A DNA stretch of 64,000 nt, taken from positions 1-64,000 of IMG/VR virus record IMGVR_UViG_3300042511_000879. One strand, 5' to 3'. A program made the position numbers and the translations under genes. The first letter of the stretch is position 1, and each line of letters opens with the position of its first letter. A model generated the notes under the pieces. It did not search any database. It was not told the DNA's origin and saw nothing but the letters and a program-made list of their open reading frames with translations. Shown here in pieces: positions 5,510 to 50,520 of the stretch.

Positions 5510-7432
5510 TTATCTGTTAAATCTTTTTGCAATTTCAGCACCTAATTCAGTAGCGTCATAACCTAGCGTTTGAGTTGTTTCAACCACTGATTCATTTACC
5601 ATAGCGATTTTTTCCATTACTGGAGCAACCTCTCTAAGGTCTCTAGTTTGCCAGAAGTTTGCAACTTGGTAAGCTGTTTCTAATTTATGATATTTAGATT
5701 GTGCTACTATTTGGTTTTTCTTACCTTCAGAACATTTAGCCCAAGTATCATGGTATTCAGTTGGCATTAATTTGATAACATTAGGTGTGTTGTTAGTTTC
5801 TACAACTCCTGATAATGAAGTGTTCCATAGAGCTAAAATTTGTCCTTCAGTAAGGTAACCTCTTCCTTCAACTGCGCTTACAACTTTAGATTTTTCTTCA
5901 ATAGTTAATGTATTAAATTCATTTACTTTCTCTTCAGAGATAAATTTAAAGAATGTTGGATTTTCTGATTTTTTAGAATTTACCTTTTCAACAATTGCTT
6001 CTAATTTAGAAGTAATTGAATTTTTGTAAGCTTCCATTTGGTCAACTTGTTTACCAGCAGCTTCTCCTTCACCTTCAAGGTCTAAGTCTTTTTCTACGTC
6101 TTCTGGTTTTCCAGTGATTACATTACCATCAGCATCAACTACATCAACAGTAACATCTTTAGTAGCAGTTTTAATGTCTTCGGCAGGAATTCCTGCTTCA
6201 GTTCCATCATTTGCTTCTGTAATTTCTTTACCAGCAGCATTTCCTTTACCAGCAAGTTTTATGTCTTTTGCAACATCTTCTGGTTTTCCAGTGATTACAT
6301 TACCATCAGCATCAACTACATCTGGAGAAACATCTTCAGTTTCATCTTTAAGAGCTTCAGCTGGAATTCCTGCTTCGTCTTCTAATAATAGGTTAGTATT
6401 AACTGTTTCTGCAACGTATTCTGCGTATTCAGTTACTTTCTCTAAGTTCTCTCTTAAATATTCAGTATATTTAATTAAGTTGTCATAAGAAGTAGAACCT
6501 TCATTGTAAGATTCAGCTAAATAGTTAGTGTAATTTTTGATAGCATCAACGCTTTCAGCGATATGCTCAGAATATTGAATACCTTGATCAACTTTTTCTG
6601 CAAGTGTTTCTGCATATTGAATACCTTGGTCTGCTTTTTCAGCAACGTGTTCTGAATATGCGATTGATTCTTCTAATTTCTTAGCTAAATAATCGGTATA
6701 TTCTTTTAATGATTGTACTTGAGAACTAGTAGACTCTGCTTCTGTTAAAGAATTCATACTTTCTTTAATAGATTTGATTTCTTCAGAAAGATATTTAGAG
6801 TATTTATTAAAATCCTCAGTCGTAATAAATTTAGACTCTGCCATTTTTGTTTCGTTTATATTTTCGATTGATTGTTTTTTGTTTTCTTTATTTATCTCGT
6901 AAATAAATAGGTCGTTTCCTTCATTAACAAAACCATAAGCTTCATTAACTCTTTTCAATTCAGCGTTTTCAAACCCAGGGTCTGCAACTAAATCGTAAGT
7001 AAACAATTGTTTGATTTTTACAGTTCCATTAGATTCAACTGCACCAGCTGCTCTACTTGAAATTTGTAATGGAACTCCAGCATCTACAAGAGCTTTTGCC
7101 TGTCTTCCTGCATCAGTATCTAATAGTCTGATACGTCCTTTAACTTGTTTTGTCTCTGTATCATAAGTAAGTTCTTCAATAATATGTGATACATTTTTTA
7201 AAGAAACATCAAATGTTTGTGGGTGGTCTAATTCACCTAATAGCTTAGATGATTTAATTTTGGCCTGTAGAGCTTCAATTTGCGGTAAGTATTCAGATTC
7301 AGTATAGATTCGGTTATTACGATTTTTCTTATCGATTTCTCCAAAGATACCCTCTAGAACATAAGTCCCACCTTCTTGTTTAAACTCTAATTCCGTTGAC
7401 GATCTTTCTAAGATCAGTAAGTTATTAGTCAT
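5510..7432 (-). CDS. Prohead protease (gp21) fused to a scaffold/core-like domain (gp22-like)
   Basis: N-terminal LEGIF..NRNNRIY, GELDHP, ISSRAAG, TYDLVADPG; long acidic helical repeat C-terminal region. Confidence 0.88.
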   Translation of the reverse strand: MTNNLLILERSSTELEFKQEGGTYVLEGIFGEIDKKNRNNRIYTESEYLPQIEALQAKIKSSKLLGELDHPQTFDVSLKNVSHIIEELTYDTETKQVKGRIRLLDTDAGRQAKALVDAGVPLQISSRAAGAVESNGTVKIKQLFTYDLVADPGFENAELKRVNEAYGFVNEGNDLFIYEINKENKKQSIENINETKMAESKFITTEDFNKYSKYLSEEIKSIKESMNSLTEAESTSSQVQSLKEYTDYLAKKLEESIAYSEHVAEKADQGIQYAETLAEKVDQGIQYSEHIAESVDAIKNYTNYLAESYNEGSTSYDNLIKYTEYLRENLEKVTEYAEYVAETVNTNLLLEDEAGIPAEALKDETEDVSPDVVDADGNVITGKPEDVAKDIKLAGKGNAAGKEITEANDGTEAGIPAEDIKTATKDVTVDVVDADGNVITGKPEDVEKDLDLEGEGEAAGKQVDQMEAYKNSITSKLEAIVEKVNSKKSENPTFFKFISEEKVNEFNTLTIEEKSKVVSAVEGRGYLTEGQILALWNTSLSGVVETNNTPNVIKLMPTEYHDTWAKCSEGKKNQIVAQSKYHKLETAYQVANFWQTRDLREVAPVMEKIAMVNESVVETTQTLGYDATELGAEIAKRFNR

Positions 7433-32263: not shown

Positions 32264-32278
32264 GCTAAAAGTTTTGAT

Positions 32279-32308: not shown

Positions 32309-32323
32309 GGATTAATTGGATTG

Positions 32324-33514: not shown

Positions 33515-33540
33515 TGTTCTTAAAATTTAATTTATAATTT

Positions 33541-35983: not shown

Positions 35984-37408
35984 TTATACAATTGGAGCGT
36001 ATCTCTCACTCAAAATTGTTTTATCCATTATTTGTTGTGGAGATTCGATATCTCCACCAAGTAAACTTGTCATAATTGCTGGAGAGAATCCAGAAACTAA
36101 TGCAGTTCCTTTAGCATCAAATGCAACTGGTACTCCTCCGTTTCGGGATTGAATATTCCAGTAAACAATTTGAGGTACCCTGTAACCTGCATCGGCATAA
36201 AGGGTTTCAATCATCTTCTGAGCAGTTGGATTCCAGTGGCTTTCTCTACCGTAACCTTTTCCTGTTGCCGAATTAAATTCCATATCCGATAGGATTAAGA
36301 TTTTGTTTGGCATTTTGTCTTGAGACAATTTGTGCTTAGTGGCCTGATCTAGGATCAGTTTGAATGTAGCCTCAAGATCTGTTGACATTCCCCAATCAGA
36401 GTCTGACATCTGTGTGTAGCGATCATTCAGTGAGCCACTTAATACTTGTAACTGTGGTTTACTTGAGAATGTGATAAATGCATCTTTGAAAAGACCTTCA
36501 TTTCTTTCAGAAATATAAAGACCTAAAGAGATTGCAACATTCATACAAGTTACAGTTTTACTTCCACCAGCTGGAGTTGACATAGAACCTGAAACATCTA
36601 CTACTGGTAAAATCATATCGTTTGCACCTTCCAAATAGTTTGGTAAGGCTTTCCATTGTTCGTTTGCTACGGTTGCATTTCCACGTTCTAATGATGTAAT
36701 AACGTCATAAGGATAAACTGCACCTGCATTAATTTTAGCCTCACCTTTTACAAGAGAAGCAATGTACGCTGAATAACTTTCGTATGCATTTTTACCAAAG
36801 GCTTTTTGGTATCTAGCCGAAGCAACTGAAGGTAATTTACCAAAATCAATAGAATTCCAGTCTTTAGCACACATTTTAGTTTCAACTACATTAGTTAAAC
36901 CTACAAGAGATTTTCTGTATTGTTTTGGGGACATTCCAGTAAATTTACGTAACTTTTCAGCTATTGGACCTTTACGTGGCATCCATTTAGCACATAAACC
37001 GTTTTCGTTGATTAATGCATCAGAGATTAGGGTGAATGCATCTTTTTCAAGATATGTTCCTGATAGGGCTAATAAGTCATCCCAACGACCATACTCTGAG
37101 ATTAAGTGTAAGTTTGGTTTAAGTACTAAGTCGTGGTTTTCTGCTAAATAAACTAAAATGTCCTTGAAAACTTGACGTTCTCCAGCTCCACCTCGAACAT
37201 CTCTGGCCCAGAAAAGTAGTTTCATAGCACGCTTCGGATCTTCATTAAATGCTTTAGAGAAAGTTGCAATCAAACGTTGCTTGTCTTGTCCTCTCATAGC
37301 TCCAATGTTAAAGAAAAGGTCAACGCAAGCATTCAATGAACTCGAGTTTGTCGCCATTCCATTTTCAGTTACTATATCTTCTTGTCTTAATGCGTCTAAG
37401 AATTCCAT
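35984..37408 (-). CDS. Ro60/TROVE-like protein with C-terminal vWA domain (DUF2828 family)
   Basis: TENG, RDVRGGAGER, YGRWDDL, AKWMPR, MIDAS VVDVSGSM, ILSDMEFN, IVYWN, VSGFS. Confidence 0.85.
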   Translation of the reverse strand: MEFLDALRQEDIVTENGMATNSSSLNACVDLFFNIGAMRGQDKQRLIATFSKAFNEDPKRAMKLLFWARDVRGGAGERQVFKDILVYLAENHDLVLKPNLHLISEYGRWDDLLALSGTYLEKDAFTLISDALINENGLCAKWMPRKGPIAEKLRKFTGMSPKQYRKSLVGLTNVVETKMCAKDWNSIDFGKLPSVASARYQKAFGKNAYESYSAYIASLVKGEAKINAGAVYPYDVITSLERGNATVANEQWKALPNYLEGANDMILPVVDVSGSMSTPAGGSKTVTCMNVAISLGLYISERNEGLFKDAFITFSSKPQLQVLSGSLNDRYTQMSDSDWGMSTDLEATFKLILDQATKHKLSQDKMPNKILILSDMEFNSATGKGYGRESHWNPTAQKMIETLYADAGYRVPQIVYWNIQSRNGGVPVAFDAKGTALVSGFSPAIMTSLLGGDIESPQQIMDKTILSERYAPIV

Positions 37409-37761: not shown

Positions 37762-38538
37762 TTACTTTAAATAACCATAATCATCTAATTTTCCATTATG
37801 ACGAAGTTCTTGGTATCTACTACCTAAATCAAAAAGAGTACCAAAATGATTTCCATTTTTATCAAAGAAATAAATGGTATCTCCATCTTCTTTATATTCG
37901 TATCTTTCTTTCATATTTCGCAAAAGATCAGTTTTTAAACCAACTAAAATTTTACTTTTAGAATTACTATAATCTACGATTTTTTGCACAGATTCATTAA
38001 TAAATTGTTCAAAGGATTTAAACTTCTTTAAGAACTCTTTACGTCTCTTTTTTTCCTCTTCCTCATCCTCTTTGTCATCTTTCCCAAAATTTGGAATGTC
38101 TCCAGAACCGACTTCAGTTTGTGAAGGTAGAGCAGTTGCTCCCATTCCTCCAATACTTTCAGGAGAAACCATCTCATCTAATTCATGATAACCGTCGTTT
38201 GCCTGTTTAATATAATTATAAGACTGTGAAATATGGTCTTGCAACCATCCTGGTAAGTCCTTTTCTTCTCTTCCAATTTTCTGAAGTAATTCACCAACTG
38301 CTTTTGAAATTGCATTAAGTTGACTCATTGCCATTCCAACTTCATGGTCTTCAGCTTCTTTAACATATTCAGGAAGTCCTTCGTGTTTTGTACTTGCAAA
38401 ATCTTTCAATTGTTGAAGTGTCATAGAATCTGCAAGGTCTTTAACCTCTTGGCTTGCATCTTTAGGGTCCATATCTCCTTTTTTAAGAGCGTATGCCATT
38501 CCCATTAATTGTTGTTGTGCTTTACTCGTACTTGGCAT
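37762..38538 (-). CDS. Multi-module protein with DUF3008-like N-terminus and an internal CTS-like motif
   Basis: MPSTSKAQQQLMGMA...LKDFASTKHEGLP; internal KSFEQFINES. Confidence 0.65.
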   Translation of the reverse strand: MPSTSKAQQQLMGMAYALKKGDMDPKDASQEVKDLADSMTLQQLKDFASTKHEGLPEYVKEAEDHEVGMAMSQLNAISKAVGELLQKIGREEKDLPGWLQDHISQSYNYIKQANDGYHELDEMVSPESIGGMGATALPSQTEVGSGDIPNFGKDDKEDEEEEKKRRKEFLKKFKSFEQFINESVQKIVDYSNSKSKILVGLKTDLLRNMKERYEYKEDGDTIYFFDKNGNHFGTLFDLGSRYQELRHNGKLDDYGYLK

Positions 38539-40118: not shown

Positions 40119-42860
40119 TTACCAAGCGTAATTTTTAGCGTCTACTTTCTTAACGTAGTCAACGATTGTTTTAGAACTTTCTTTCATTCTACCTTCATAG
40201 AATTTTCCGCTATAACCAGATGCAGCCTCTTTTTCAATATCTACAGCGTATGCAACATATCTGTTATATTCATCTAGGATGTTTTTCATTAAGTTAGAAG
40301 CATCGCTCATTTTGATTTCTCTACCTCTAGGGTCTAGTCCAATAATAAGTTCTCCATATTTTCCTTTTTCAGCTTTAGTTAGGGCATCTTTGATTTGTGT
40401 AGCAAGAGTATCAATAGCTCCTAATACAATTGAATCCATCGGCATTTCTGAAGCTTTTTGGGCTAATATTTGGTTATAACGGGCTTTGTTTTCTGCTTTA
40501 AAGTCTTTATCACTTTTAAAAGCAGTAGCTCCACGTTTATCATCGGCTCTTTTTGATACTAATGACGTTGTAGAATATCTTGCTTTAAGGACATCTAAGT
40601 CAATAACATAAACAGTATCGGCTAATTCAGCTACTTTAGTAAGTGAAGTGATTCCAGAACCATCGTATCTTTTACTGTCTCTTTTGTCAAATCCTGCTGC
40701 ATCTTCTCTAGAACTTGCTTTTGATATAGTTTCAGTTTTTGAGTATCTATTATATCCGGTAGAGTACCATTCATTTTGTCCATTAGTCATTGCTAATAGG
40801 GTGTTTGATTGGATAATTCCATTATTGTATCTACTTGGAATTCTACCAGCTTCAATATATGGATTCTCTTTTTGGTTAGTTACTATATAGAAGTAAATTG
40901 CGTTAGCTCTTTTTTCTTTACGAGCAGTTTGAGGGTCCATTTCAATAATGTCATAATCTTCGATTTGGTCAATTGCCAATTTTGAGAAGTTATAGAATGC
41001 TCCTGCAAGGTCTTTAGTACCTGCACTTCCTACAGAGAAAAGGTTAGATAATTTAGCACTTTTAAATGCCTCGTTTAATGTACCTTCATTTAATTTGTTT
41101 TCAACAAATTCTGCGAAAGATTCGTAAATAAATTTTGTTTTCATATCGTTGTTATTTTTGTTTTCGTCTAAGTCAATAACCCAAGCATATTCAACGTACT
41201 TGATAGCGTCTTCAGGATTTACATCCCATTTAAGTGCCGCATCTAATACGATTTTTCTTGTAATTTTGCTATTTGGGTATTTTGCAATTTCTTTTTCAAA
41301 TCCTCCAGGAACCCAAATCTTAGGTGCCTTAGTAGTAGCTTCAAATATTTGCTTTAATCTTCCTTTTAATAGTTTTTTAACCTCTATTGACATATTGGTT
41401 TTATTATTATCGAATTCTTTAGAATTTCCTAATTCTTCTCTATTAAAAGCATTTAATTTATCATCAAAATACTCATCAGCATCAAGGTCTTCTATATTAT
41501 CGTCAACATCTAACCATTCATCATCTACAAATTGTTTAGCTAATTTTTTATAGTTTAATCCTTCATTCATAGTAGCTTCAGAAACCATAACATTTTTAAG
41601 GATTCTTGAACCTGTTTTTGATAGGGTAATTCCATCTTCAGATACATTAAAACACTGAGCGTTTCTTCTCAACCATCTTTTAGAATCTGTAGTCATTTCT
41701 TTAAGAATATTATTAAAATCTTCTTGAGAAAGTTTACCATCTTTAATAGCTTCTAGCATTTTGTTACGAACTTTAGCAGCTTTACCTACAGTAACTGCAG
41801 GATTTTTATCAGTATAATGCCTTTTGATTGTGATGTTTCTTTCATTAACTACTGATTCTTTAATAGCATTTTTAACATCGCCTAATGTAGATATTTCCAT
41901 GTTGGTTGCAACTGTTAAAAAATCAAATGCATCTTCATATTCTCCACGATCCCAGAGTTTGTCAAATTCTTCAATATCATCTTCATCACCGATTAGAGCA
42001 TATCCTGGATCAATTCCAATTTCTTTATTAATAAAGTCGATAGTTTTTTTAATGTCAGATTTTTTAAATCCAGTTTCATTAACTACTGATTCATTTAAAC
42101 CAAACTCTCTGATATCGTTTTGTCCATTGTCAAATGATTTTTGAATAGCCGCTAATGCTTCTTTTCTATCGCTTGCAGATTCAAACCCAATTTCGTCATC
42201 GCTAAATGCTTTTGAATATTTTTTCCATGAGTCTTTTGATAAATCAGCAACTTTTCTTAAGTTGATTACTGTAGATTCTATACGGTATTTTGAAGCAGTT
42301 CCGGATGGGTAATTGTTAGTTGATAAACCTAAAACTAAATTAGCCTCATCTAAAGAAGATTCTTTAATAATTTTATCATCTTTATGGAAAATGTATTCCA
42401 TTTTCTTACCAGTTTTCTTAAATTCACCGCTATAAGAAACTTCTCCATCTTTATTTTTAAAAACTTTATCAACTACAAATTCTCCATCAGATGAAGCGTA
42501 AGGAATTACAATACTTCCTTTTTTAACAGTAGCTTCATTTGTAACTGATTCTGATAATTTATTAAGATTTTTAACAATAGTATCTACTGAATCATTCCAT
42601 TTACCATAAACAGGACTTCCAGGTACGGCATTGTTTACAACATCACCATTTGCATGTATAGTATAAGAACCTCCATCGAACTCTTCTCCATTACAATCGA
42701 TGTCGAATGAATCCTCTTCTAATGTTCTAGTGTTAACGGTGCATTTGCTACCATCTGCCTTTGAAAGGGCTTTAGCATAAAGTTCTGCAACTTTTTTAGT
42801 TTTTTCTACAGATAACCCCATCGGTTTAGAGCTTTCGTTTAAGAATTGATCAAAATTCAT
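40119..42860 (-). CDS. Modular internal-head polyprotein (913 aa)
   Basis: MNFDQFLNE leader; repeated ESVTNE/ESVVNE linkers; late promoter. Confidence 0.65.
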   Translation of the reverse strand: MNFDQFLNESSKPMGLSVEKTKKVAELYAKALSKADGSKCTVNTRTLEEDSFDIDCNGEEFDGGSYTIHANGDVVNNAVPGSPVYGKWNDSVDTIVKNLNKLSESVTNEATVKKGSIVIPYASSDGEFVVDKVFKNKDGEVSYSGEFKKTGKKMEYIFHKDDKIIKESSLDEANLVLGLSTNNYPSGTASKYRIESTVINLRKVADLSKDSWKKYSKAFSDDEIGFESASDRKEALAAIQKSFDNGQNDIREFGLNESVVNETGFKKSDIKKTIDFINKEIGIDPGYALIGDEDDIEEFDKLWDRGEYEDAFDFLTVATNMEISTLGDVKNAIKESVVNERNITIKRHYTDKNPAVTVGKAAKVRNKMLEAIKDGKLSQEDFNNILKEMTTDSKRWLRRNAQCFNVSEDGITLSKTGSRILKNVMVSEATMNEGLNYKKLAKQFVDDEWLDVDDNIEDLDADEYFDDKLNAFNREELGNSKEFDNNKTNMSIEVKKLLKGRLKQIFEATTKAPKIWVPGGFEKEIAKYPNSKITRKIVLDAALKWDVNPEDAIKYVEYAWVIDLDENKNNNDMKTKFIYESFAEFVENKLNEGTLNEAFKSAKLSNLFSVGSAGTKDLAGAFYNFSKLAIDQIEDYDIIEMDPQTARKEKRANAIYFYIVTNQKENPYIEAGRIPSRYNNGIIQSNTLLAMTNGQNEWYSTGYNRYSKTETISKASSREDAAGFDKRDSKRYDGSGITSLTKVAELADTVYVIDLDVLKARYSTTSLVSKRADDKRGATAFKSDKDFKAENKARYNQILAQKASEMPMDSIVLGAIDTLATQIKDALTKAEKGKYGELIIGLDPRGREIKMSDASNLMKNILDEYNRYVAYAVDIEKEAASGYSGKFYEGRMKESSKTIVDYVKKVDAKNYAW

Positions 42861-42884: not shown

Positions 42885-44756
42885 TTATATATCTTTGTTA
42901 ATAAATTGTTCGAATGTCATGATTTCATTAGTAACTGATTCTGTAACAACTCCCATTGCATCTTCAATTTTAGATTTAAGTTCATTATACATCGAATGAA
43001 CTGCCTTTGGTGTTAGATTGTTAAATTGTTTTTCATTACCATCTAATAGAGCATTTCTAACTGCAGTAGCCGAAATATCATCGTCAGTTCTTGGAATTTC
43101 AAAAAGTCCAAAATCAGCTCTACAATTTAATTGGTCTCTATAAGAATCATTATTAACTTGATAACCATAGCTTGTCATTCTATCACTTCCCGTTCCCCAA
43201 AGTACTGGCTCATATTTAGGTCTCATTTCATTAAACATGATATCGATACCTCCAGTTGGAACTACAAATATTTCTTTTAAGAATGGATATTGTTTTTTAA
43301 CATGATTGAACATATCGATTTGGGTCTTTTCATCGTATGGTCTGCTAAATTCATCACCTTTCTTTTTGGTTTTTGATTTAACTAGGAATACAACTACTGG
43401 AAATCCATTCTCTTTATGTATAGTTTCTAAAACTTTTGCATGGCCTAATGTAAACGGCTGGAATCTTCCAACAAACATATTTACTGGTTGTTTTCCTTGT
43501 TCAACATGAGTAAGTTTAAGTGCCTCGTTTAAATTAACTGAAGATTTGATTTTATCACGCAACATAAAATTTTGGTAGTCATAGATTGCATTTTCATCAG
43601 TGTTTTCAACAAATATTTTATCGTTGATTTTTTCAATAATTTCGTTTAAACGTTCCATAGTATCTTGGTCTATTAAATCTGAAGTTTTAGTTCTTTTCTT
43701 TCTAAAAGAACCTAAAATCATTTTAAAAAGTTCTGCTAGAATATCGTTAGAAACATATTTTAAGGTTTTTTCATCGGTAATATACTTTGAGTTTAATTTA
43801 AAAGATTCTGCTGATGAAAATTCAGCGCTTTCAAAATTAACTCCAATATATTTTGAAGAGTTCTTGTCAACATATTCATTAAATATAATTGACATTATTT
43901 CAAGATATCGATAATCTGCTCGGTCATCTTCAAGCTGTACTTCATCGATCTTAAATTGAGTTATAAATTCTAAAAAGTCGGTGACTGCAATTTGATACAT
44001 GTGACTTGAAGAGTTATCAATTGGATTTTTTCTTGTAAAATCTTCTAATTTAAAAGATTTTATAGATTTTTCATCGATAAAATTAACAACCAATCCATCG
44101 AATTCCTCATCAATATCAGAATTTAGGGCAGTTTCAAAAGCACTAGGATTAAAAAGTTTAACTATTTTACTGGTAAAACTTAATTTGTCCTTTGTTTCTG
44201 GTAAATAGTCGAATGATTCACTAAATTCTCTATCACTCATTCCAAGCAATTCTAGTAACTCATCTCTTTGTAATTGAGATAAATAGCCATCAAATAATAT
44301 GCTTGGCTGTTGAACATCAAGAATTTTTGCCCATTTATTTAAGATTACCGGGTCATTAATAGTTTTCTTAACTTTATTACCTTCTCCAAGTTGTTGGATA
44401 TGCGTTAAGATTAAATTATTTTTTGGAGTTTTTATGTATTTAATTTTAGATACATTAACTTCTGGTAGGTATTCAAAACCAAATCTCCAATCAATTGGCA
44501 TTTGATTTTTAGTAGCACTTGGTAAACTTTGCATGTAGTTGATTGCAATCTCATATAGAGATATAATTGTTCTATCAACTAAATTTAGTTTGTCTGAATT
44601 TGAAGATTTAAAATATTCAAATCCATCAAGATTTCTTTTAACAAGAAATGTAGGCGCAGAAACTTTCTCAGTTACTAACACCCTATTTTTTAACATCTCA
44701 ATAAAGGTTTCTCTATTGGTTTCGTTAAAATACTCTCTTAATTTTTGTAATGCCAT
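42885..44756 (-). CDS. Cytidyltransferase-like (HIGH nucleotidyltransferase) protein with degenerate ligase-like N-terminal domain
   Basis: FVGRFQPFTLGH, GSDR, ISATAVR; N-terminal VTEKVSA...FDGLVV. Confidence 0.75.
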   Translation of the reverse strand: MALQKLREYFNETNRETFIEMLKNRVLVTEKVSAPTFLVKRNLDGFEYFKSSNSDKLNLVDRTIISLYEIAINYMQSLPSATKNQMPIDWRFGFEYLPEVNVSKIKYIKTPKNNLILTHIQQLGEGNKVKKTINDPVILNKWAKILDVQQPSILFDGYLSQLQRDELLELLGMSDREFSESFDYLPETKDKLSFTSKIVKLFNPSAFETALNSDIDEEFDGLVVNFIDEKSIKSFKLEDFTRKNPIDNSSSHMYQIAVTDFLEFITQFKIDEVQLEDDRADYRYLEIMSIIFNEYVDKNSSKYIGVNFESAEFSSAESFKLNSKYITDEKTLKYVSNDILAELFKMILGSFRKKRTKTSDLIDQDTMERLNEIIEKINDKIFVENTDENAIYDYQNFMLRDKIKSSVNLNEALKLTHVEQGKQPVNMFVGRFQPFTLGHAKVLETIHKENGFPVVVFLVKSKTKKKGDEFSRPYDEKTQIDMFNHVKKQYPFLKEIFVVPTGGIDIMFNEMRPKYEPVLWGTGSDRMTSYGYQVNNDSYRDQLNCRADFGLFEIPRTDDDISATAVRNALLDGNEKQFNNLTPKAVHSMYNELKSKIEDAMGVVTESVTNEIMTFEQFINKDI

Positions 44757-44777
44757 CTCTTTGTTTTTATTAATTAA

Positions 44778-45245
44778 TTATGATGAACTTTTTGATACTT
44801 CAAATACTCTTCGTTGTTCGTCTAAATAAACTTTAGTATCTACCCAAATAGAACCTAACTTTGTTTCTTTCTTAGGGTCAGTTATATCAGTAAATGTCAA
44901 TAGGGTTACATTAACCTCTTCTCCTCTTTTAGACTGTAGTGCTAATTGATAATCATTCAACCAATACTGTGAATTGTGAATTCTGTATTTTGGAGTATCG
45001 ATGATATTTCCATGTGGTTTTACTTCAAAATATTGATAGTGAACAAACATAGTTTCTCCTTCAAAATCCCAAATCCATTCCATTGCCGTATCTGTTGTTT
45101 TTGCAGTAAGTGGCATTAATTTCTTAAAGAATGTTTCGTCTAATGAATTAGATTTCTTTAATACTTCAGGTTTAAAGTTATTAATTGTTGATTCATATAG
45201 TTGTCTAGTTTCAACAAATTTTTCGAATAGTTTTACGTGTTTCAT
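44778..45245 (-). CDS. CTS-leader hypothetical protein
   Basis: MKHVKLFEKFVE at 45245. Confidence 0.7.
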   Translation of the reverse strand: MKHVKLFEKFVETRQLYESTINNFKPEVLKKSNSLDETFFKKLMPLTAKTTDTAMEWIWDFEGETMFVHYQYFEVKPHGNIIDTPKYRIHNSQYWLNDYQLALQSKRGEEVNVTLLTFTDITDPKKETKLGSIWVDTKVYLDEQRRVFEVSKSSS

Positions 45246-45246
45246 T

Positions 45247-46536
45247 TTATCTTCCATATTTTATAATTCCCATCAACTGATTAATCGCAGCGAATGTTCC
45301 TGTTAATTTGTACATGTGTCCTTTGTATGAAAATACAATACCTTCAGTCGGTATAATAGATTGGATTCCTCCAATTCTTTCAAGTCTATCAAGTTCTTTT
45401 GCAACTTTCTCGATTTGAGTAAGGTCTCCATTTAGTTTAATTTTATCGGCTTCAGTTCTGATTTCATTATGTAGCCTTTGCATTTCTTTTTCAGGAGAAG
45501 CAGCAACAAAGTTACTTGCATTCTTTAAGATAACACTTCCAAGTTCTAAGAAAAGGTCTTCAAATGGTCTAATGTTTTCTTTGAATTTTACTTTAAAGTC
45601 TTCTTTGTCAAATTTCTTAACAGCATCTGATTGTTGTTTTGTTAATTCTTTGTCTAAAGAGCGCATGTTTAATGTTTTCTTATCATCATATGCCCATCTA
45701 AGTAATAATCCTTCTTTAATATTTTGTGGATATTCTCCGAATAAATTTTCAATTTGCTCTCTCCACCACATTTCATGGTATCTTGCAACTGCATCAGCAT
45801 CTGTTAATTTATAACGATTTTTAAGAGCATCAAGTTTTCCTAGGAATTTAGACTGATTCTCTTCAAAATTCATATCTTTTTGTAGTTTAATAACCTGCGG
45901 AGGGATTATTGTAAATGTTTTTCCAATATCAGCGTTTAGGGATTTAAGTACTCCAGTAACACTTTTTGCCGCACTATTGTCATCTCCAACTATATTTCCT
46001 GCACCATCAGTTTTCTTGATACCATGGAATTGAATTACATCAACATCGTAGTGAATTACATTAGGATTTGCAGAATATATCAACTCCATGTTCATGAAGT
46101 TTAGGCCATTCTGGAACACTTCCTCTTGTGTTTTTGCCGGCAACTTTATAAGCAGGGTTGCTAAATCAGCGGCTGCAAATTGGAAAGTATCTTGTACTAA
46201 TTTGCTAGCATGTCCCTCAAATTTATTTTGGAAATCCTTAAGGCTCATAGGATTTTGCAACTCAGTTTTATTTCTGGCAAATTTAACTTCACCATTTTGA
46301 ATAGTTGCAAATACGTTTTGACCGTCTGTTTTTTCAGTAGGTTCCTCTTCAAAGTTCAATTCACCTTGAAGTCCACCAATAATCATATTCTTGAAGTCTC
46401 CGAATGTTAGGTCATTATTATCGAATGGATGGGACATGTGTCCAGCAGCTCCACCTTCTAATAGTAACTGTTCATTCAATTTAACTTCATACTTTTCAGT
46501 TATGAATCGATTAAAATTAAGGATTCTTGTTTTCAT
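45247..46536 (-). CDS. Polynucleotide-ligase-fold nucleotidyltransferase (DUF6267-like)
   Basis: EGGAAGHMSHPFD, motif I TEKTDG, motif IV PTEGIVF, YKLTG.F..INQ. Confidence 0.65.
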   Translation of the reverse strand: MKTRILNFNRFITEKYEVKLNEQLLLEGGAAGHMSHPFDNNDLTFGDFKNMIIGGLQGELNFEEEPTEKTDGQNVFATIQNGEVKFARNKTELQNPMSLKDFQNKFEGHASKLVQDTFQFAAADLATLLIKLPAKTQEEVFQNGLNFMNMELIYSANPNVIHYDVDVIQFHGIKKTDGAGNIVGDDNSAAKSVTGVLKSLNADIGKTFTIIPPQVIKLQKDMNFEENQSKFLGKLDALKNRYKLTDADAVARYHEMWWREQIENLFGEYPQNIKEGLLLRWAYDDKKTLNMRSLDKELTKQQSDAVKKFDKEDFKVKFKENIRPFEDLFLELGSVILKNASNFVAASPEKEMQRLHNEIRTEADKIKLNGDLTQIEKVAKELDRLERIGGIQSIIPTEGIVFSYKGHMYKLTGTFAAINQLMGIIKYGR

Positions 46537-46543: not shown

Positions 46544-47092
46544 TTACTTTGCAACTCTGTTGCTTTTAATGTTTTCCATTGCGATATCATCAATCAATCT
46601 TGTAAAAGAACTTAGGGTTGCAGCGGTATAAAATCCATCTTCACCAGGACCTGCATTGTTTGCTCCTACTTTATAAGCTTGAATGTGTCCAGCAAGTTCT
46701 AATGCTGCATCTCCCCATCCGGTGTCATTTCCTCCATTAGATTTAGCACGTTTAATTGCATCATTAGTAAGTGCTACTAAATCGTTTGCACCTCTAAATG
46801 CTTCGGGTTTTTTACTACTTTTCTTACCAGAAACGTTATTGTGTTCAATATCATCAAGGCCCATATTATTAACCAGTTCTTGGAATAATGATGGTGTTTG
46901 TGGACCATACCATTTGTCTGCCTTTGGGTCAATAGTACTATCAATATATTTTCCAAGGTCTGTTAGGTAATCAAGTACATTTTGACCATTACCGCCACGT
47001 GCAAATATTTTTTTAGAGGCGTCTTTTACGTATTTTACGTAGTCATTTTTTCCTTCGTTAATAAATTGTTCGAATAATTGTATGTGTTTCAT
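46544..47092 (-). CDS. CTS-leader hypothetical protein
   Basis: MKHIQLFEQFINE. Confidence 0.75.
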   Translation of the reverse strand: MKHIQLFEQFINEGKNDYVKYVKDASKKIFARGGNGQNVLDYLTDLGKYIDSTIDPKADKWYGPQTPSLFQELVNNMGLDDIEHNNVSGKKSSKKPEAFRGANDLVALTNDAIKRAKSNGGNDTGWGDAALELAGHIQAYKVGANNAGPGEDGFYTAATLSSFTRLIDDIAMENIKSNRVAK

Positions 47093-47093: not shown

Positions 47094-47366
47094 TTATAAA
47101 TTGCTTAGTTTATTGTTTAAATCAAGTATTGCAGAATTAATTTTTATTTTCTGATTATCAAGTTCAAGAAGTGACATTTTAAGAGTTGCTATTTGCGCTT
47201 GAATTGCAGATTTTGGGTCATCTACCTTTTGATTCAAATCATTTACTTTATTTCTAAGTTCTTTTCTTTTTAGGAATATGTCGTGTGATTTAGCCGACAA
47301 ATCAGATCTTGCATCTGTATAGTCAGATTCATTTAAGAACTCTTCAAATAAGTTAATGTGTTTCAT
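47094..47366 (-). CDS. CTS-leader coiled-coil protein
   Basis: MKHINLFEEFLNE at 47366. Confidence 0.72.
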   Translation of the reverse strand: MKHINLFEEFLNESDYTDARSDLSAKSHDIFLKRKELRNKVNDLNQKVDDPKSAIQAQIATLKMSLLELDNQKIKINSAILDLNNKLSNL

Positions 47367-47430
47367 AGTGTAAATATAATAAAAATACCTGACATGGTAA
47401 AACATCAGGTATTATTTATTTGAATTATTT

Positions 47431-50400
47431 TTAAGATTCTTGAGCTATCATTGCATCGATAACATCAGATGAAATCCATCCTTTTGCTTTAACAAATTCT
47501 TTTGCAAGTTTTAAAACTTTCTTTTCTCCAGCAGATGTTACCTCATTTTCTTTACCGTTTTCATTATTATCATTCCAATCTTCAACGCAACCTTCTACTT
47601 CTTGCTGTAGTTGAAAATTACCTGGATTTTTACTTTTTGTAGAATCTTCATGATAATCTTCCCAGTAGTTTGCATCAAATGCTTCAGTAACAACTGATTC
47701 TCCAAGAGAACTTGTTAGCATTCCAACCGCAGCTCCATAATCTCCATCACATTTTTTAAGAATTCCATCAACTACTTCTCCAGCTTTAGCTTCATCAAAG
47801 TCTTCTCCGAATGCTTTTTTCAAAACAGCCATCGCATATTCTTTAAATTCGTCATCAGATTTAACTTCAGCTTCATTAACCGTAGATTCAAATACTAACG
47901 TAACATCCTTAACGTTAAGAGTTTTAACTAAATCTCCTAATTTATCATATAAATCATTTAATTCATCTTCAGTGTGGTGTTTATATCCTTTCTTTAAGTT
48001 TATATTTGCACTACCAAATTTAGCCATATAATCATCTTTTCCTTCAGTAACTACTGATTCTTTAGCAGATCCAGCGGCTTTAGCTCTTTTTAATTGGGCT
48101 TTTTTGATTCTGTCCGTTTCTTCTCTATGGTCTCTTAATTTCTTTAATTTCTTTAATTGCTCAGCTTTACGAGTTGCTTCAGCACTTGGACCAGAACGTT
48201 GATAACCACTTTCAGTTACTGTAGATTCAGCAACATTGTTTTCCCACCATGTTTTAAGTTCATTAAAATCAGATTTACCCATGTTAGAAATCATGTATTC
48301 GATAATATCATTGTCGTAATCTTCAGCCTCATCTCTGTAACCTCCTGGAGTATCGATATAATCTTTACCCATGATTCTTTTGATTCTTTGTTCTGGCATA
48401 CCATCGATTTCCTCACAGAATTCTTCAAAGTCTTTAGTTGATTTGAATTTTTCAGCTTCATTAACTACTGATTCATTTGCGTAAGCTCCTAATTCGCTGA
48501 ATTTAACTTTTTTACCTGCTTTTTCTTCATCATTTTCATCAGAATGCGCTAATAAACCTGCATCAAATAATCTTTTAAGAACTTCTCCTTTAACCAGACT
48601 ATAGTCGATAGCATTACTTGAATTTTCCCAAGTATCACCTACATATTCTGGATCGATCCAACCATAACCTGATTTAATATCTTTAATTAAGGTCTGTACA
48701 TCTTTGTCAAATTGCTTAGTACCTTCATTAACTACTGACTCGATCAATTCCATATTATATGCATTTGAAATGTCAGTTTTAATTTCTCCAGTTTCTTTTG
48801 AATGCAACTTCATAGTTTTACCATCAGGATTTAATTTAATGAATGTAACTTCACCGTAGTCTGATGTGTATTTGTGGTTTGGCTTTAAGTCTTTTGCTTT
48901 ACCTTCGTAAACAGTTCCAGCAACCTCATCATAATTGTTAAATTTCTTAGCAGATTTTTTAACAGTGTTTAATTGTTTAATGATAGAATCAATTACTCCA
49001 GGGTCAATATCATTTCCAGCATTTGCACTATTAAATAAGTTGGTTAAATTTTTAGATGCTAAGTATAATTCGTTACCAATAACATCTTTTGGTAATCGGT
49101 TGAATGCTTCAGAAACGGTAGATTCATTACATAATGAATAAAGTTCTTGCGCAATCTTTTTTGCTTTTGAACCAGAATGTCCGTAAGTTTCTACAGTATC
49201 TAATGCATCTTCCATCGACATACCATGTAGTTCTTCCATATCACCATCTCTTTCATCTAAAAGATCGTCTAGTATATTTGAAGCCTCATCAGCCTCTTTT
49301 GATTCAGAAACTACCAATTCTAGGTCTTTATCTTTATCAGCAATTGTTGCATCAAGTTCAGCTTCTAGGGCTTTCTTTTGAGCAGTCATTTCTTTTAATT
49401 TTCCAAGTAATGATTCTTTAGCAGAACCTTCAGCAACTTTCCAATTTTGTGCGGTAGCTTGCATTGAAGTTGTTAACTTAGACCAGTCATATTGAATTTT
49501 AGCAATTGAACGAGCTTCATCAATAGATTCTACTGATTCATTTTTCTTTTGAGATGCTTTTAAATCTTCAAGTTCTTTTTTCAATTTAGGGTCTAATTGT
49601 CTTTCAATTCCCCAGTTAAAACTTGCATTTATTAACATATTCAATGGTAAGTTTTCATTTTTCTTACCGAATACGGATGTTTTAATCCAGTTTAAATAAT
49701 GTTCAGCTAAATCTTTTGATAATTTAATACCTTCTGCTCTTGAAGAATCTCCATCAACAATAGATTGAAGTATCTTTTTAGCCATTCCGTGTGAACCTTC
49801 ATTAACTACAGATTCTTGTATAAAACTAATATCTTTAAGATATAATTCATAGTCAGAACCATCTTGTGTATATCCAGTAAAAGAATCTCCTTTGTCATCT
49901 TTTAATTCTTTAGGGTCAACTGAATACCAGTCATTTCCAACAAAAACTTCTACAGGTTTTCCACTAGTTTGAGTATATAAGTCATGTGCAGTTTTACCTG
50001 TGAATTTGGTTCTTTTAGCCTCTTCGACTTTGTAAGTTTCACCATCAACTTCGAATTCATCTTCGTCATCTTCTTTTGCTTTTTTAACAGCAGCTCCGAA
50101 CGCATTACCTTCGTTTTTTTCGCTTTCGCTAAGACCAGTGTCTTTCTTAATGGTTACTTTATATTTTTTACCATTAAATTCAAACTCAGATTTTCCATCT
50201 TGTTTAGCTTTACTGGCTGCAAAAATAAATGCATTTCCCTCTTCTAGTTTTTTAGGTTCTCCTAATTTATTAAGCTCATCTTCAATATCTTCTGCCTCAT
50301 CTTCTGAAACTGTTCCAAACATTTTGTTAATTAGGGCTTGTTTTTTCTCTTCATCTAACTCAGATAGAGAAGTTAAACCCATTTCATCAAGGATTGCTCC

Positions 50401-50520
50401 AATTTTACCAACAGTTTCCTGTCTTTTTGCATTGTTTGTTTCTCTTAGTTTCATTGTATTTTCCTGATTCTTAACTTCAGTAAAACTCTTAAATGAAGAG
50501 ATTTTGTTAACTTGTGCCAT
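47431..50520 (-). CDS. Modular internal-head polyprotein (1029 aa)
   Basis: KISSFKSFTE leader; about 9 ES[V/T]V[N/T/S]E linkers separating 60-100-aa modules; late promoter. Confidence 0.65.
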   Translation of the reverse strand: MAQVNKISSFKSFTEVKNQENTMKLRETNNAKRQETVGKIGAILDEMGLTSLSELDEEKKQALINKMFGTVSEDEAEDIEDELNKLGEPKKLEEGNAFIFAASKAKQDGKSEFEFNGKKYKVTIKKDTGLSESEKNEGNAFGAAVKKAKEDDEDEFEVDGETYKVEEAKRTKFTGKTAHDLYTQTSGKPVEVFVGNDWYSVDPKELKDDKGDSFTGYTQDGSDYELYLKDISFIQESVVNEGSHGMAKKILQSIVDGDSSRAEGIKLSKDLAEHYLNWIKTSVFGKKNENLPLNMLINASFNWGIERQLDPKLKKELEDLKASQKKNESVESIDEARSIAKIQYDWSKLTTSMQATAQNWKVAEGSAKESLLGKLKEMTAQKKALEAELDATIADKDKDLELVVSESKEADEASNILDDLLDERDGDMEELHGMSMEDALDTVETYGHSGSKAKKIAQELYSLCNESTVSEAFNRLPKDVIGNELYLASKNLTNLFNSANAGNDIDPGVIDSIIKQLNTVKKSAKKFNNYDEVAGTVYEGKAKDLKPNHKYTSDYGEVTFIKLNPDGKTMKLHSKETGEIKTDISNAYNMELIESVVNEGTKQFDKDVQTLIKDIKSGYGWIDPEYVGDTWENSSNAIDYSLVKGEVLKRLFDAGLLAHSDENDEEKAGKKVKFSELGAYANESVVNEAEKFKSTKDFEEFCEEIDGMPEQRIKRIMGKDYIDTPGGYRDEAEDYDNDIIEYMISNMGKSDFNELKTWWENNVAESTVTESGYQRSGPSAEATRKAEQLKKLKKLRDHREETDRIKKAQLKRAKAAGSAKESVVTEGKDDYMAKFGSANINLKKGYKHHTEDELNDLYDKLGDLVKTLNVKDVTLVFESTVNEAEVKSDDEFKEYAMAVLKKAFGEDFDEAKAGEVVDGILKKCDGDYGAAVGMLTSSLGESVVTEAFDANYWEDYHEDSTKSKNPGNFQLQQEVEGCVEDWNDNNENGKENEVTSAGEKKVLKLAKEFVKAKGWISSDVIDAMIAQES

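What the first reader, a model, noticed from the sequence alone, without database searches (positions are those of the whole stretch)
42885..46536. Ligase-fold plus HIGH-nucleotidyltransferase pair embedded among packaged proteins
45247-46536 has intact ligase-type motifs (EKTDG, EGIV, YK) behind a CTS-like leader ending LNEQLLLE. 42885-44756 has a degenerate copy of that fold (EKVSA in place of KxDG), then an LNE site, an NMNAT/cytidyltransferase-like domain (GRFQPFTLGH) and a C-terminal ESVTNE + TFEQFIN tag. Inference: a virion-delivered enzyme pair, perhaps for NAD+/nucleotide restoration, RNA repair or protein nucleotidylation at the start of infection.
Basis: partly seen in the sequence, partly recalled or inferred. 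Interest (0 to 1): 0.6.

Follow-up and report, generated by a model that had tools for sequence, protein, structure and literature searches.

The report
Capsid-targeted RNA-ligase-fold enzymes with adenylyltransferase
A 234-kb phage carries a conserved gene pair encoding two very divergent RNA-ligase-fold enzymes and an NMNAT-like adenylyltransferase, marked with T4-style head-targeting and protease-cleavage signals, so they are probably injected with the DNA to repair RNA or restore NAD+.

Summary

- **ORF-A fold.** It has no Pfam, PHROG or PDB sequence match. A confident AF2 model (pLDDT 88) matches only RNA ligases (NgrRnl Z 9.3, REL1, Trl1, T4 Rnl2 and Rnl1). Motifs I, III, IIIa, IV and V are invariant in the family. 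A helical insert of about 170 aa sits between IIIa and IV.
- **ORF-B.** Residues 1-243 are also a ligase fold (T4 Rnl2 Z 11.9, Foldseek E 6e-8). The motif I lysine is kept but DG is lost. Next come a helical domain, a disordered linker with a conserved LNE, a HIGH-superfamily nucleotidyltransferase nearest to NMNATs, then ESVTNE and a conserved TFEQFIN tail.
- **Conservation.** The two genes are adjacent in nearly all of the 80 related contigs.
- **Family.** ORF-A's family has 1,846 clusters. Most members are long fusions with a HIGH domain, and some also carry a Pnk-like kinase or a CCA-adding enzyme.
- **Packaging signals.** The phage has a T4 gp21-type protease, about 20 ORFs with the same N-terminal leader, and one transcription unit that holds the pair.

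Packaging and enzyme activity are inferred, not shown. I read this as a new variant of a known kind.

The parts
45247..46536 (-). ORF-A, 429 aa: leader plus a divergent RNA-ligase-fold nucleotidyltransferase
   Evidence: ORF. AF2 pLDDT 87.9, pTM 0.84. The top 12 VIA matches are all ligases: 5cot Z 9.3, 1xdn 8.7, 9r3w 8.4, 2hvq 8.0, 9do4 7.6. The Foldseek top hits are Trl1-LIG, T4 Rnl1 and Rnl3.
46495..46536 (-). ORF-A residues 1-14 (MKTRILNFNRFITE): capsid-targeting-like leader ending in I-x-E
   Evidence: It follows the same pattern as about 20 ORFs that start MKHIKLFEQF[LIV]NE. The pattern is conserved in orthologues. pLDDT is below 50.
46459..46494 (-). ORF-A residues 15-26: variable linker holding LNE and LLLE, two candidate protease sites just before the module
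   Evidence: The family module starts at LLxEGG. 77% of long relatives have [ILVM]-x-E directly before GG. 28% have [ILVM][NT]E in the 11 aa before it, against 2.3% background.
46426..46455 (-). GGAAGHMSHP (residues 28-37): near-invariant family signature of unknown role
   Evidence: G28, G29, G32, H33 and H36 are at least 90% conserved.
46315..46335 (-). Motif I, EKTDGQN (residues 68-74), with the putative nucleotidyl-acceptor K69
   Evidence: D71 and G72 are invariant; E68, K69 and Q73 are at least 90% conserved. In relative L022 an intein is inserted exactly between K69 and T70.
46009..46101 (-). Motifs III and IIIa on strands 146-153 (E151) and 167-176 (F170, H171)
   Evidence: E151 is invariant; F170 and H171 are at least 90% conserved. 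The strands are in the model.
45352..45867 (-). Helical insert, residues 224-395, lying between motifs IIIa and IV
   Evidence: Secondary structure. The ligase alignments span model residues 30 to about 423, so the C-terminal strands complete the fold.
45298..45351 (-). Motifs IV and V: PTEGIVF ... YKLTG (residues 396-413)
   Evidence: P396, G399, K410, T412 and G413 are invariant; E398 is at least 90% conserved.
42885..44756 (-). ORF-B, 623 aa: ligase-fold domain, helical domain, linker, HIGH nucleotidyltransferase and C-terminal tail
44028..44756 (-). ORF-B residues 1-243: Rnl2-like nucleotidyltransferase fold. Motifs: EKVSAP at 30-35, FGFEYLPE at 92-99, LILTHI, DGLVVNF at 220-226, FKLED at 235-239.
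   Evidence: VIA matches: 1s68 Z 11.9 (190 aa, 3.6 A), 5cot 11.8, 9qw7 11.3, 1xdn 10.9. Foldseek 2hvq E 6.4e-8. Conservation.
43608..44012 (-). ORF-B residues 249-383: helical domain that follows the ligase fold
   Evidence: No informative fold match.
43500..43607 (-). ORF-B residues 384-419: disordered linker with the conserved LNE site (409-411, window 43524-43532)
   Evidence: pLDDT is below 50 for residues 384-410. N410 is at least 90% conserved and E411 and L413 are invariant.
42957..43499 (-). ORF-B residues 420-600: HIGH-superfamily nucleotidyltransferase with GRFQPFTLGH and ISATAVR motifs
   Evidence: PF01467 E 2.8e-7, 31.2 bits against a cut-off of 21. phrog_3041. The nearest solved relatives are NadM 2qjo and M. 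jannaschii NMNAT 1f9a. It is the only PF01467 in the genome.
42888..42941 (-). ESVTNE (606-611) plus the tail IMTFEQFINKDI (612-623): candidate C-terminal propeptide with a leader-like motif
   Evidence: T4 Alt is trimmed at both ends by gp21 (PMC9026906).
37708..47413 (-). Putative transcription unit bounded by two 12-bp hairpin-plus-T-run sites. It holds the ORFs at 47094-47405 and 46544-47092, ORF-A, 44778-45257, ORF-B, the 913-aa polyprotein-like ORF and four more ORFs, three of them starting with the leader.
   Evidence: Terminator-like sites at 47413-47384 and 37735-37708. Genes abut or overlap.
5510..7432 (-). Prohead protease of the T4 gp21 type, the presumed processing enzyme
   Evidence: PF03420 Peptidase_S77 E 1.4e-11. 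phrog_207.

Best explanation
ORF-A and ORF-B are a conserved two-gene module of a jumbo phage. Its capsid is related to those of metagenomic huge phages and the Prevotella Lak phages.

Shown:
- ORF-A is a very divergent member of the covalent (lysine-nucleotidylating) ligase superfamily and is closest in fold to RNA ligases. All five catalytic motifs are conserved, and a helical domain is inserted between motifs IIIa and IV.
- ORF-B joins a second RNA-ligase-fold domain to a HIGH-superfamily nucleotidyltransferase. The ligase-fold domain has an Rnl2-like order of elements, keeps the motif I lysine and has lost DG. The HIGH domain is nearest to archaeal/NadM-type NMN adenylyltransferases.
- The two genes are adjacent in related phages. 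In most other phages the ORF-A-type module is fused to a homologous HIGH domain, sometimes with a Pnk-like P-loop kinase or a CCA-adding enzyme.

Inferred:
- Both proteins are built into the prohead core. ORF-A would be targeted by its N-terminal leader and ORF-B by its C-terminal FEQFIN tail.
- The T4 gp21-type protease then trims them after [ILV]-x-E sites. ORF-A would be cut after ITE-14 and/or LLLE-26. ORF-B would be cut after LNE-411 and SVTNE-611.
- This releases two ligase-type enzymes and one adenylyltransferase, which are ejected with the DNA.
- In the cell they act before any phage gene is expressed, as a multi-activity counter-defence cargo. The ligases would reseal RNA, most likely tRNA, cut by host abortive-infection nucleases. 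The HIGH enzyme would make NAD+ from NMN, or adenylylate another phosphate.
- The fusions probably reflect co-delivery of different activities rather than one metabolic pathway.
For: **Folds**
- ORF-A model pLDDT 87.9. The top 12 of 48,161 chains are all ligases, Z 9.3 to 6.8. The Foldseek top hits are all RNA ligases.
- ORF-B residues 1-243 match T4 Rnl2 at Z 11.9 and Foldseek E 6e-8.

**Active-site conservation**
- Invariant and near-invariant residues are listed.
- A relative has an intein exactly inside EK^TDG.

**HIGH domain**
-.

**Link between the two genes**
- ORF-A sits directly upstream of ORF-B in nearly all of the 80 IMG/VR loci and in LR756500.
- Mel-JY01 encodes a HIGH plus ORF-A-type fusion next to the terminase and prohead protease genes.
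- Among 150 representatives, 51 carry a strict HIGH motif and 35 match ORF-B's HIGH profile over its full length.

**RNA context**
- Fusions carry a Zeta/AAA_33 kinase or PolyA_pol/CCA-adding domains, E 2e-31.
- A leader-bearing LigT-like 2H phosphoesterase lies elsewhere in the genome.
- A TROVE-like gene lies at 35984-37408, about 300 bp beyond the downstream hairpin of the unit.

**NAD+ context**
- The genome has a Nampt, and ORF-B is its only HIGH enzyme.

**Packaging logic**
- An S77 protease is present.
- The leader motif occurs 29 times against 1.7 expected.
- Orthologue leaders keep the pattern.
- Protease-type sites are enriched at the module border, 28% against 2.3%. Related sequences inflate that p-value.
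- LNE lies in a disordered linker.
- The pair shares a transcription unit with other leader-bearing ORFs.
- GATATATAA occurs 9 times, all on the gene strand, against 1.55 expected. It precedes the capsid, protease and tail-fibre genes and the two polyprotein-like ORFs.
- T4 rules for the capsid targeting sequence, L/I-x-E cleavage and two-ended trimming of Alt come from PMC9026906.
Against: - There is no direct evidence of virion presence, cleavage or any enzyme activity.
- Neither ligase-fold domain matches any ligase family by sequence or profile. Fold scores for ORF-A (Z 9.3) are only moderately above the tool's stated noise range.
- ORF-B lacks the DG of motif I.
- Both proteins keep only one lysine in motif V.
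- The phage already has a canonical Pnk-like kinase plus Rnl cassette near its tRNA array, so extra RNA ligases need a separate rationale.
- The HIGH domain scores far below the NMNAT equivalog cut-offs, 33 against 181 bits.
- Nampt is about 95 kb away. It is absent from Mel-JY01 and LR756508, which have ORF-A-type genes.
- Some family members have M or C instead of E before GG, so cleavage there cannot be universal.
Confidence: 0.45

Rival explanations
1. The enzymes are real but are not packaged. They are ordinary cytoplasmic late proteins for RNA repair or nucleotide metabolism. The shared N-terminal peptide would serve another purpose, such as translation, localisation or binding a common partner.
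For: - There are no virion data.
- Leader-bearing ORFs are scattered over several genome regions.
- ORF-B has no N-terminal leader.
- The cluster is flanked by replication genes, a helicase and a TROVE-like gene, rather than by head genes.
Against: - The leader resembles the T4 capsid targeting sequence in length and position and ends in [ILV]-x-E.
- The phage protease is of the gp21 type.
- Neighbouring 913-aa and 1029-aa ORFs carry repeated ESVVNE sites, typical of processed core proteins.
- Protease-type sites mark the domain borders.
- The Mel-JY01 homologue sits among morphogenesis genes.
Confidence: 0.22
2. The module is mainly an NAD+ restoration device. ORF-B's HIGH domain would be the NMNAT partner of the phage Nampt, as in NARP2. 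The ligase-fold domains would use or sense NAD+ or related nucleotides and would not seal RNA.
For: - The HIGH domain's nearest relatives are all NMNATs.
- The genome encodes a Nampt with a NAMPT_N domain and has no other HIGH enzyme and no Nudix.
- Nampt is also present in relatives G001 and LR756500.
- Kinase plus HIGH fusions recall NadR-like NARP3 enzymes (PMC13464706).
Against: - The score is far below the NMNAT equivalog cut-offs.
- The GSAQ-type stretch of archaeal NMNATs is not kept in the alignment.
- Nampt is absent from Mel-JY01 and LR756508.
- The fused kinases match Zeta/AAA_33 (Pnk-like), with no match to the NadR kinase family (AAA_28).
- A CCA-adding enzyme fusion points to tRNA.
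- Nothing explains two ligase folds.
Confidence: 0.18
3. The target is DNA. The delivered ligase-fold enzymes would seal nicks or join genome ends on entry, or take part in DNA hypermodification inside the capsid.
For: - DNA ligases also appear in the fold lists.
- A 5-hmdU DNA kinase-like gene and partners lie 8-13 kb downstream.
Against: - RNA ligases outrank DNA ligases in all four fold searches.
- No OB or DNA-binding domain typical of DNA ligases was found.
- The fusion partners are RNA enzymes.
Confidence: 0.08
4. One or both ligase-fold domains are catalytically dead and serve as structural or DNA-binding core proteins.
For: - ORF-B motif I lacks DG.
- Motif V has a single lysine in both proteins.
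- There is no sequence similarity to active ligases.
Against: - The putative catalytic residues are invariant over 1,846 clusters and over ORF-B orthologues down to 48-50% identity.
- An intein is inserted at motif I.
Confidence: 0.07

Closest known systems
ATP-dependent RNA ligases: T4 Rnl2 and TbREL1 (Rnl2), NgrRnl (Rnl5), T4 Rnl1 and fungal Trl1-LIG (Rnl1)
   Same: They share the nucleotidyltransferase fold. The motif order I, III, IIIa, IV, V is the same. ORF-A has an EKxDGxN-type motif I. ORF-B has a helical domain after the fold, as Rnl1 and Rnl2 do.
   Different: There is no sequence or profile similarity. ORF-A has a helical insert of about 170 aa between IIIa and IV and a GGxxGHxxHP signature. 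ORF-B reads EKxxAP. Both have one lysine in motif V. Both are tied to a HIGH domain and carry head-targeting-type signals.
Archaeal/NadM-type NMN adenylyltransferases and the phage NAD+ reconstitution pathways NARP2 and NARP3
   Same: The HIGH fold is shared. GRFQPF-x-x-GH and ISxTxxR motifs are present. A Nampt is encoded in the same genome.
   Different: The score is 33 bits against a cut-off of 181. The first His of HxGH is Thr. It is fused behind a ligase fold rather than to a Nudix or NadR-type kinase. It is not next to Nampt.
T4 internal head proteins and Alt (capsid targeting sequence, gp21 processing)
   Same: There is a short N-terminal leader ending in [ILV]-x-E and a gp21-type S77 protease. 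Trimming at both ends, as for Alt, is possible. The cargo would be an enzyme delivered with the DNA.
   Different: The cargo would be nucleic-acid or nucleotide enzymes, not an ADP-ribosyltransferase or an anti-restriction protein. The preferred site here looks like [VLI]-N-E. Nothing has been shown experimentally.
Polyvalent proteins of phages and conjugative elements (Iyer et al. 2017, PMC5512222)
   Same: Long relatives combine several unrelated enzymatic domains in one polypeptide that is predicted to be injected early.
   Different: The passages of that paper returned by the term search mention no RNA ligases or HIGH domains in polyvalent proteins. Its hub domains (zincin peptidase, MuF, ArdC) were not seen in the relatives scanned here. 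Processing would be by the prohead protease.
T4 Pnkp-Rnl1 and jumbo-phage RNA repair sets (PMC7824862)
   Same: The domain types found together are a kinase, a ligase, a 2H phosphoesterase, a CCA-type nucleotidyltransferase and a TROVE-like protein.
   Different: Those systems are cytoplasmic and use recognisable Rnl1, Rnl2 or RtcB families. This phage has such a canonical cassette as well.

Membership tests
Covalent nucleotidyltransferase (ligase/capping) superfamily, ORF-A | Nucleotidyltransferase fold | tested here: met
   AF2 pLDDT 87.9. The top 12 VIA hits are all ligases, Z 9.3-6.8, with 160-200 aligned residues. The Foldseek top hits are all RNA ligases, though E is only 2.7e-3.
Covalent nucleotidyltransferase (ligase/capping) superfamily, ORF-A | Motif I KxDG lysine, plus motifs III (E), IIIa (aromatic), IV (EG) and V (K) in that order | tested here: met
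   The residues are K69-T-D71-G72, E151, F170, E398-G399 and K410, all invariant or at least 90% conserved. Residue-by-residue structural equivalence was not checked, because no coordinates were available.
Covalent nucleotidyltransferase (ligase/capping) superfamily, ORF-A | Match to a curated ligase family model (PF09414, PF09511, PF01068) | tested here: not met
   ORF-A has no Pfam hit at E up to 0.1. Only 2 of 50 relatives touch PF09414, at E about 1e-3. The PDB profile search finds no ligase.
Covalent nucleotidyltransferase (ligase/capping) superfamily, ORF-A | Lysine self-nucleotidylation and strand sealing | not testable with these tools
   This needs biochemistry.
Rnl2-like RNA ligase, ORF-B residues 1-383 | Fold of the adenylyltransferase domain | tested here: met
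   1s68 Z 11.9 and 2hvq Z 11.7. Foldseek E 6.4e-8, probability 1.0. The model is of medium confidence, pLDDT 74.9.
Rnl2-like RNA ligase, ORF-B residues 1-383 | Motif I EKxHG/EKxDG | tested here: inconclusive
   E30 and K31 are conserved, but the next positions read V-S-A-P, so there is no D/H-G.
Rnl2-like RNA ligase, ORF-B residues 1-383 | Match to PF09414 or a sequence relation to a known Rnl | tested here: not met
HIGH-superfamily nucleotidyltransferase (PF01467), ORF-B residues 420-600 | Family model above the gathering score, plus (H/T)xGH and ISxTxxR motifs | tested here: met
   31.2 bits against 21. TLGH is at 436-439 and ISATAVR at 561-567, both conserved.
NMN adenylyltransferase (archaeal/NadM type) | Equivalog-level score | tested here: not met
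   TIGR01527 gives 33.1 bits against a cut-off of 181.2. NF003791 gives 29.8 against 409.
NMN adenylyltransferase (archaeal/NadM type) | Pathway partner (Nampt) in the genome | tested here: inconclusive
   Nampt is present here and in 2 of 5 other records with the module. It is absent from the complete Mel-JY01 genome.
T4-type capsid-targeted, gp21-processed head proteins | gp21-type (S77) prohead protease in the genome | tested here: met
   PF03420 E 1.4e-11 at 5510-7432.
T4-type capsid-targeted, gp21-processed head proteins | Short shared N-terminal propeptide ending in [LI]-x-E | tested here: met
   This applies to ORF-A. ORF-B has only a C-terminal leader-like tail.
T4-type capsid-targeted, gp21-processed head proteins | Presence in virions and cleavage at the predicted sites | not testable with these tools
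   This needs virion mass spectrometry or N-terminal mapping.
Polyvalent proteins (Iyer et al. 2017) | Several unrelated enzymatic domains in one polypeptide of a phage | tested here: met
   This holds for relatives only: kinase + HIGH + module, and HIGH + CCA-adding + module. In the window the domains are spread over two genes.
Polyvalent proteins (Iyer et al. 2017) | Link to hub domains (zincin peptidase, MuF, ArdC-N) | tested here: not met
   None was found in the 15 long relatives scanned.

The most novel reading that the evidence does not exclude
The HIGH nucleotidyltransferase and the ligase-fold domains form one new catalytic system that is delivered inside the capsid. One possibility is that the HIGH domain adenylylates an RNA 5'-phosphate, or supplies NAD+ as the AMP donor, and the motif-I-divergent ligase domain does the sealing. 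That would split the classical three-step ligase reaction between two folds. It would also be the first virion-injected RNA repair machine, acting before any phage gene is expressed.
Probability: 0.12. Interest if true: 0.85.

Novelty: new variant of a known kind. Interest (0 to 1): 0.63.

Why it matters
- It would assign a fold and a testable chemistry to a very large, virus-only protein family with no annotation: 1,846 clusters at 50% identity. I know of no curated Pfam model that detects the window's own protein.
- If the packaging inference holds, RNA repair and/or NAD+ restoration would join the short list of activities that phages inject with their DNA, alongside Alt, IPI, Dar proteins and virion RNA polymerases. 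That would let a phage meet tRNA-cleaving or NAD+-depleting abortive-infection systems at time zero.
- The unusual ligase topology and the recurrent ligase-HIGH fusion are of interest to enzymologists.
- The short leader and [VLI]-N-E sites could become a cargo-loading tag for phages of Bacteroidota-type hosts.

Tried and rejected
- BLASTP of ORF-A against ORF-B gave nothing (E 2.2).
- hhalign of the two family profiles, as whole profiles and as sub-profiles, gave nothing significant. I also re-ordered ORF-A's columns to mimic ORF-B's topology. The best result was E 0.14, which aligned the two motif I stretches. Recent paralogy is therefore not supported.
- hhalign of either family against the phage's own canonical Rnl was not significant. 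The only local match was motif IV.
- Sequence and profile searches of the PDB found no ligase for either protein.
- DNA similarity to known phages gave only an 88-bp match.
- I modelled a complex of ORF-A (27-429) with ORF-B's HIGH domain (412-611). The result was no answer (score 0.01), which is not evidence either way.
- Tpt1, Nudix and T4 Rnl1 families were not found in the genome. The Rnl1 control also found nothing anywhere, so that blank is uninformative.
- Pfam DUF6267 was suggested by the Atlas look-alike search but was not confirmed by hmmscan. No paper mentions it.
- No paper on Mel-JY01 is held.
- No alternative genetic code was needed.

Full report
**Setting.** The window is bases 134133-198132 of a single 234,467-bp virus record. 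GC content is about 33% and nearly all genes lie on the minus strand. The window encodes:
- a major capsid protein, a T4 gp21-type prohead protease (Peptidase_S77) and a portal protein;
- tail fibres;
- a split family-B DNA polymerase, helicases, a primase and an SSB;
- a ribonucleotide reductase.

The capsid protein is closest to a 462-kb metagenomic huge phage (LR756500, 52% identity). More distant matches are the Prevotella Lak phages, Sphingomonas phage PAU and Tenacibaculum phage PTm1. Table 11 reads all genes without trouble.

**The observation.** ORF-A is 45247-46536 (minus strand, 429 aa). ORF-B is 42885-44756 (minus strand, 623 aa). Both have many metagenomic homologues annotated only as hypothetical or 'cytidyltransferase-like'. 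These come from contigs of up to about 260 kb.

**ORF-A.**
- It has no hit in Pfam, PHROGs, NCBIfam or PDB sequences.
- An exhaustive search finds 1,846 clusters at 50% identity.
- A 50-sequence alignment shows these invariant residues: D71, G72, R88, D124, E151, R280, P396, G399, K410, T412 and G413. Near-invariant are G28-G29-x-x-G32-H33-x-x-H36, E68, K69 and E398.
- AF2 gives a confident model (pLDDT 87.9, pTM 0.84) with residues 1-31 disordered.
- Foldseek returns only RNA ligases at the top, with weak E-values.
- The Foldseek-independent search of 48,161 chains puts twelve ligases first: NgrRnl Z 9.3, TbREL1 8.7, Trl1 8.4, T4 Rnl2 8.0 and T4 Rnl1 7.6. The alignments run from residue 30 to about 423.
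- The final two strands (EGIVF, YKLTG) therefore complete the fold after a helical excursion of about 170 residues (224-395).
- The motif order is canonical: I (EKTDGQN), III (E151), IIIa (F170-H171), IV (E398-G399), V (K410).
- Independent support that EKTDG is a working site comes from relative L022. There the gene is broken exactly between K69 and T70 by an intein (Cys1 ... His-Asn, then Thr+1). The intein is itself split by a separate endonuclease-like ORF.

**ORF-B.**
- Residues 427-567 match PF01467 above the cut-off, and phrog_3041 also matches.
- The nearest solved and curated relatives are NadM and archaeal NMNATs, but far below equivalog level.
- TLGH and ISATAVR are conserved.
- I folded residues 1-410 with 39 homologues down to 48% identity. 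Mean pLDDT was 74.9.
- Residues 1-243 are a ligase nucleotidyltransferase fold: T4 Rnl2 Z 11.9, NgrRnl 11.8, Trl1 11.3 and Foldseek E 6e-8.
- The N-terminus is structured, so it is not a leader.
- Conserved positions fit motifs I (E30-K31, then V-S-A-P), III (FGFEYLPE), IIIa (LILTHI), IV (D220-G221) and V (K236).
- Here motifs IV and V follow directly, and a helical domain (249-383) comes afterwards, as in Rnl1 and Rnl2.
- Residues 384-410 are disordered and hold the conserved LNE.
- The tail ESVTNE plus IMTFEQFINKDI is conserved at the protein level.
- ORF-A and ORF-B's N-domain share the fold but no detectable sequence relation.

**Link between the genes.**
- In nearly all of the 80 related IMG/VR loci, with ORF-B identity down to 52%, the ORF-A orthologue ends a few bases before ORF-B starts. 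The 159-aa ORF between them in the window occurs only in the closest relatives.
- The same order holds in LR756500.
- Outside this clade the ORF-A module is nearly always the C-terminus of a longer protein.
- Of 150 representatives, 51 carry a strict HIGH motif, and more do so by eye. 35 match a profile of ORF-B's HIGH domain over its whole length.
- Some add a Zeta/AAA_33 P-loop kinase. One adds PolyA_pol head and RNA-binding domains, which make a CCA-adding-type enzyme (E 2e-31).
- Microcystis phage Mel-JY01 encodes a 639-aa HIGH plus module fusion between structural genes, the terminase and the prohead protease.

**Packaging signals.**
- About 20 ORFs in the genome start with MKHIKLFEQF[LIV]NE. 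The motif occurs 29 times against 1.7 expected.
- ORF-A orthologues keep the same pattern (MK..ILNFNQF[IL]TE, MKIYNTFEQFLTE, MKPILSLKDFIVE), while the linker that follows varies.
- The pattern resembles the 10-residue T4 capsid targeting sequence. It ends in the L/I-x-E that gp21 cuts. T4 Alt is trimmed at both ends (PMC9026906).
- The 913-aa and 1029-aa neighbours carry three and five ES-V-[VT]-[NT]-E sites.
- In 129 long relatives, 77% have [ILVM]-x-E directly before the module's GG. 28% have [ILVM][NT]E in the preceding 11 residues, against 2.3% elsewhere. The sequences are related, so the p-value is inflated.
- The genes from 47366 down to 37762 abut or overlap. They lie between two 12-bp hairpin-plus-T-run sites.
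- GATATATAA occurs nine times, all on the gene strand (1.55 expected). It precedes the capsid, protease and tail-fibre genes and both polyprotein-like ORFs.
- Another leader-bearing ORF outside the window is a LigT-like 2H phosphoesterase with two HxT motifs that matches phrog_755.

**Function.**
- RNA repair is favoured by the fold ranking and by the kinase and CCA-enzyme fusions. The leader-bearing 2H enzyme and the TROVE-like gene beside the cluster also favour it.
- Jumbo phages commonly carry several RNA ligases (PMC7824862).
- NAD+ restoration is favoured by the HIGH domain's nearest relatives and by a genomic Nampt with no other HIGH enzyme.
- However, Nampt is distant in the genome and is absent from Mel-JY01 and LR756508.
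- The phage also has a canonical kinase-Rnl cassette and a CCA-adding enzyme elsewhere.
- I therefore read the module as injected, protease-matured cargo that combines RNA-sealing and adenylyl-transfer activities. This follows the logic of polyvalent proteins (PMC5512222). The fusions would then reflect co-delivery.
- A single joint chemistry remains possible but is untested.
- The complex prediction gave no answer.

**Limits.**
- No coordinates could be inspected, so residue equivalences rest on motif order, secondary structure and conservation.
- No virion or expression data could be obtained.
- The record is estimated to be 77% complete, so absences from the genome are provisional.

Noticed in passing
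L022:505-3012 (IMGVR_UViG_3300036668_000307): The ORF-A orthologue is 'fractured' inside motif I. The N-extein ends ...EPTEK and is followed by an intein N-part (CLSENT...). Next comes a separate 287-aa endonuclease-like ORF (990-1853). Then an intein C-part ends ...GILVHN, followed by TDGQN.... This is a split-intein-plus-homing-endonuclease arrangement.
   Followed up: partly
window 29964-34627: This looks like a possible thymidine hypermodification cluster. There is a 5-hmdU DNA kinase helical domain (PF18723) at 29964-31154. Two ORFs match phrog_17781 (29964-31154 and 33566-34627). A myo-inositol-1-phosphate-synthase-like ORF lies at 32324-33514.
   Followed up: no
window 35984-37408: A 474-aa protein carries DUF2828 plus DUF7788 and matches phrog_850 'RNA-binding protein'. 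It is probably a TROVE/Ro-like RNA repair platform. It lies about 300 bp beyond the downstream hairpin of the leader-gene unit.
   Followed up: no
window 40119-42860 and 47431-50520: Two long ORFs (913 and 1029 aa) have no family match but carry 3 and 5 repeats of ES-V-[VT]-[NT]-E. They look like polyproteins cut into several pieces by the prohead protease. Each is preceded by GATATATAA.
   Followed up: partly
window, 9 sites (3742, 5461, 7457, 11871, 16067, 25227, 42885, 50553, 54963): GATATATAA occurs only on the gene strand (9 found, 1.55 expected). It lies 20-110 nt upstream of the capsid, protease and tail-fibre genes and other genes. It is a candidate late-promoter element reminiscent of T4 TATAAATA.
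   Followed up: partly
window 22281-23477 and 28057-29454: The family-B DNA polymerase is split into two ORFs about 4.6 kb apart. The ribonucleotide reductase large subunit and two leader-bearing ORFs lie between them.
   Followed up: no
G000:C1:105915-106481 (outside the window): A 188-aa ORF has the leader MKRIKLFEEFLNE followed by a LigT-like 2H phosphoesterase (HCTL and HMTV motifs, phrog_755). This is a second RNA-end enzyme that looks capsid-targeted. It lies about 1.9 kb from a canonical Rnl (PHA02142 OB + PF09414) and AAA_33 kinase pair.
   Followed up: partly
G000:C1:65401-104512 (outside the window): There are 29 tRNA genes, most in one array. One 90-nt gene has an 8-nt anticodon loop, read by ARAGORN as 'ttga'. 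A Nampt gene (C1:81811-83340) and a short CCA-adding enzyme (C1:79545-80285) lie nearby.
   Followed up: no
window 47384-47413: A 12-bp hairpin with a T run lies just upstream of the real start (MKHINLFEEF...) of ORF 47094-47405. The longer reading MFYHVRYFYYIYT..., also seen in some database entries for ORF-A orthologues, is probably translated terminator or promoter DNA.
   Followed up: partly
window 37762-38538: A 258-aa ORF with an N-terminal DUF3008 carries an internal copy of the leader motif (KSFEQFINES at about residue 176). This suggests that the motif also works inside a polypeptide.
   Followed up: no
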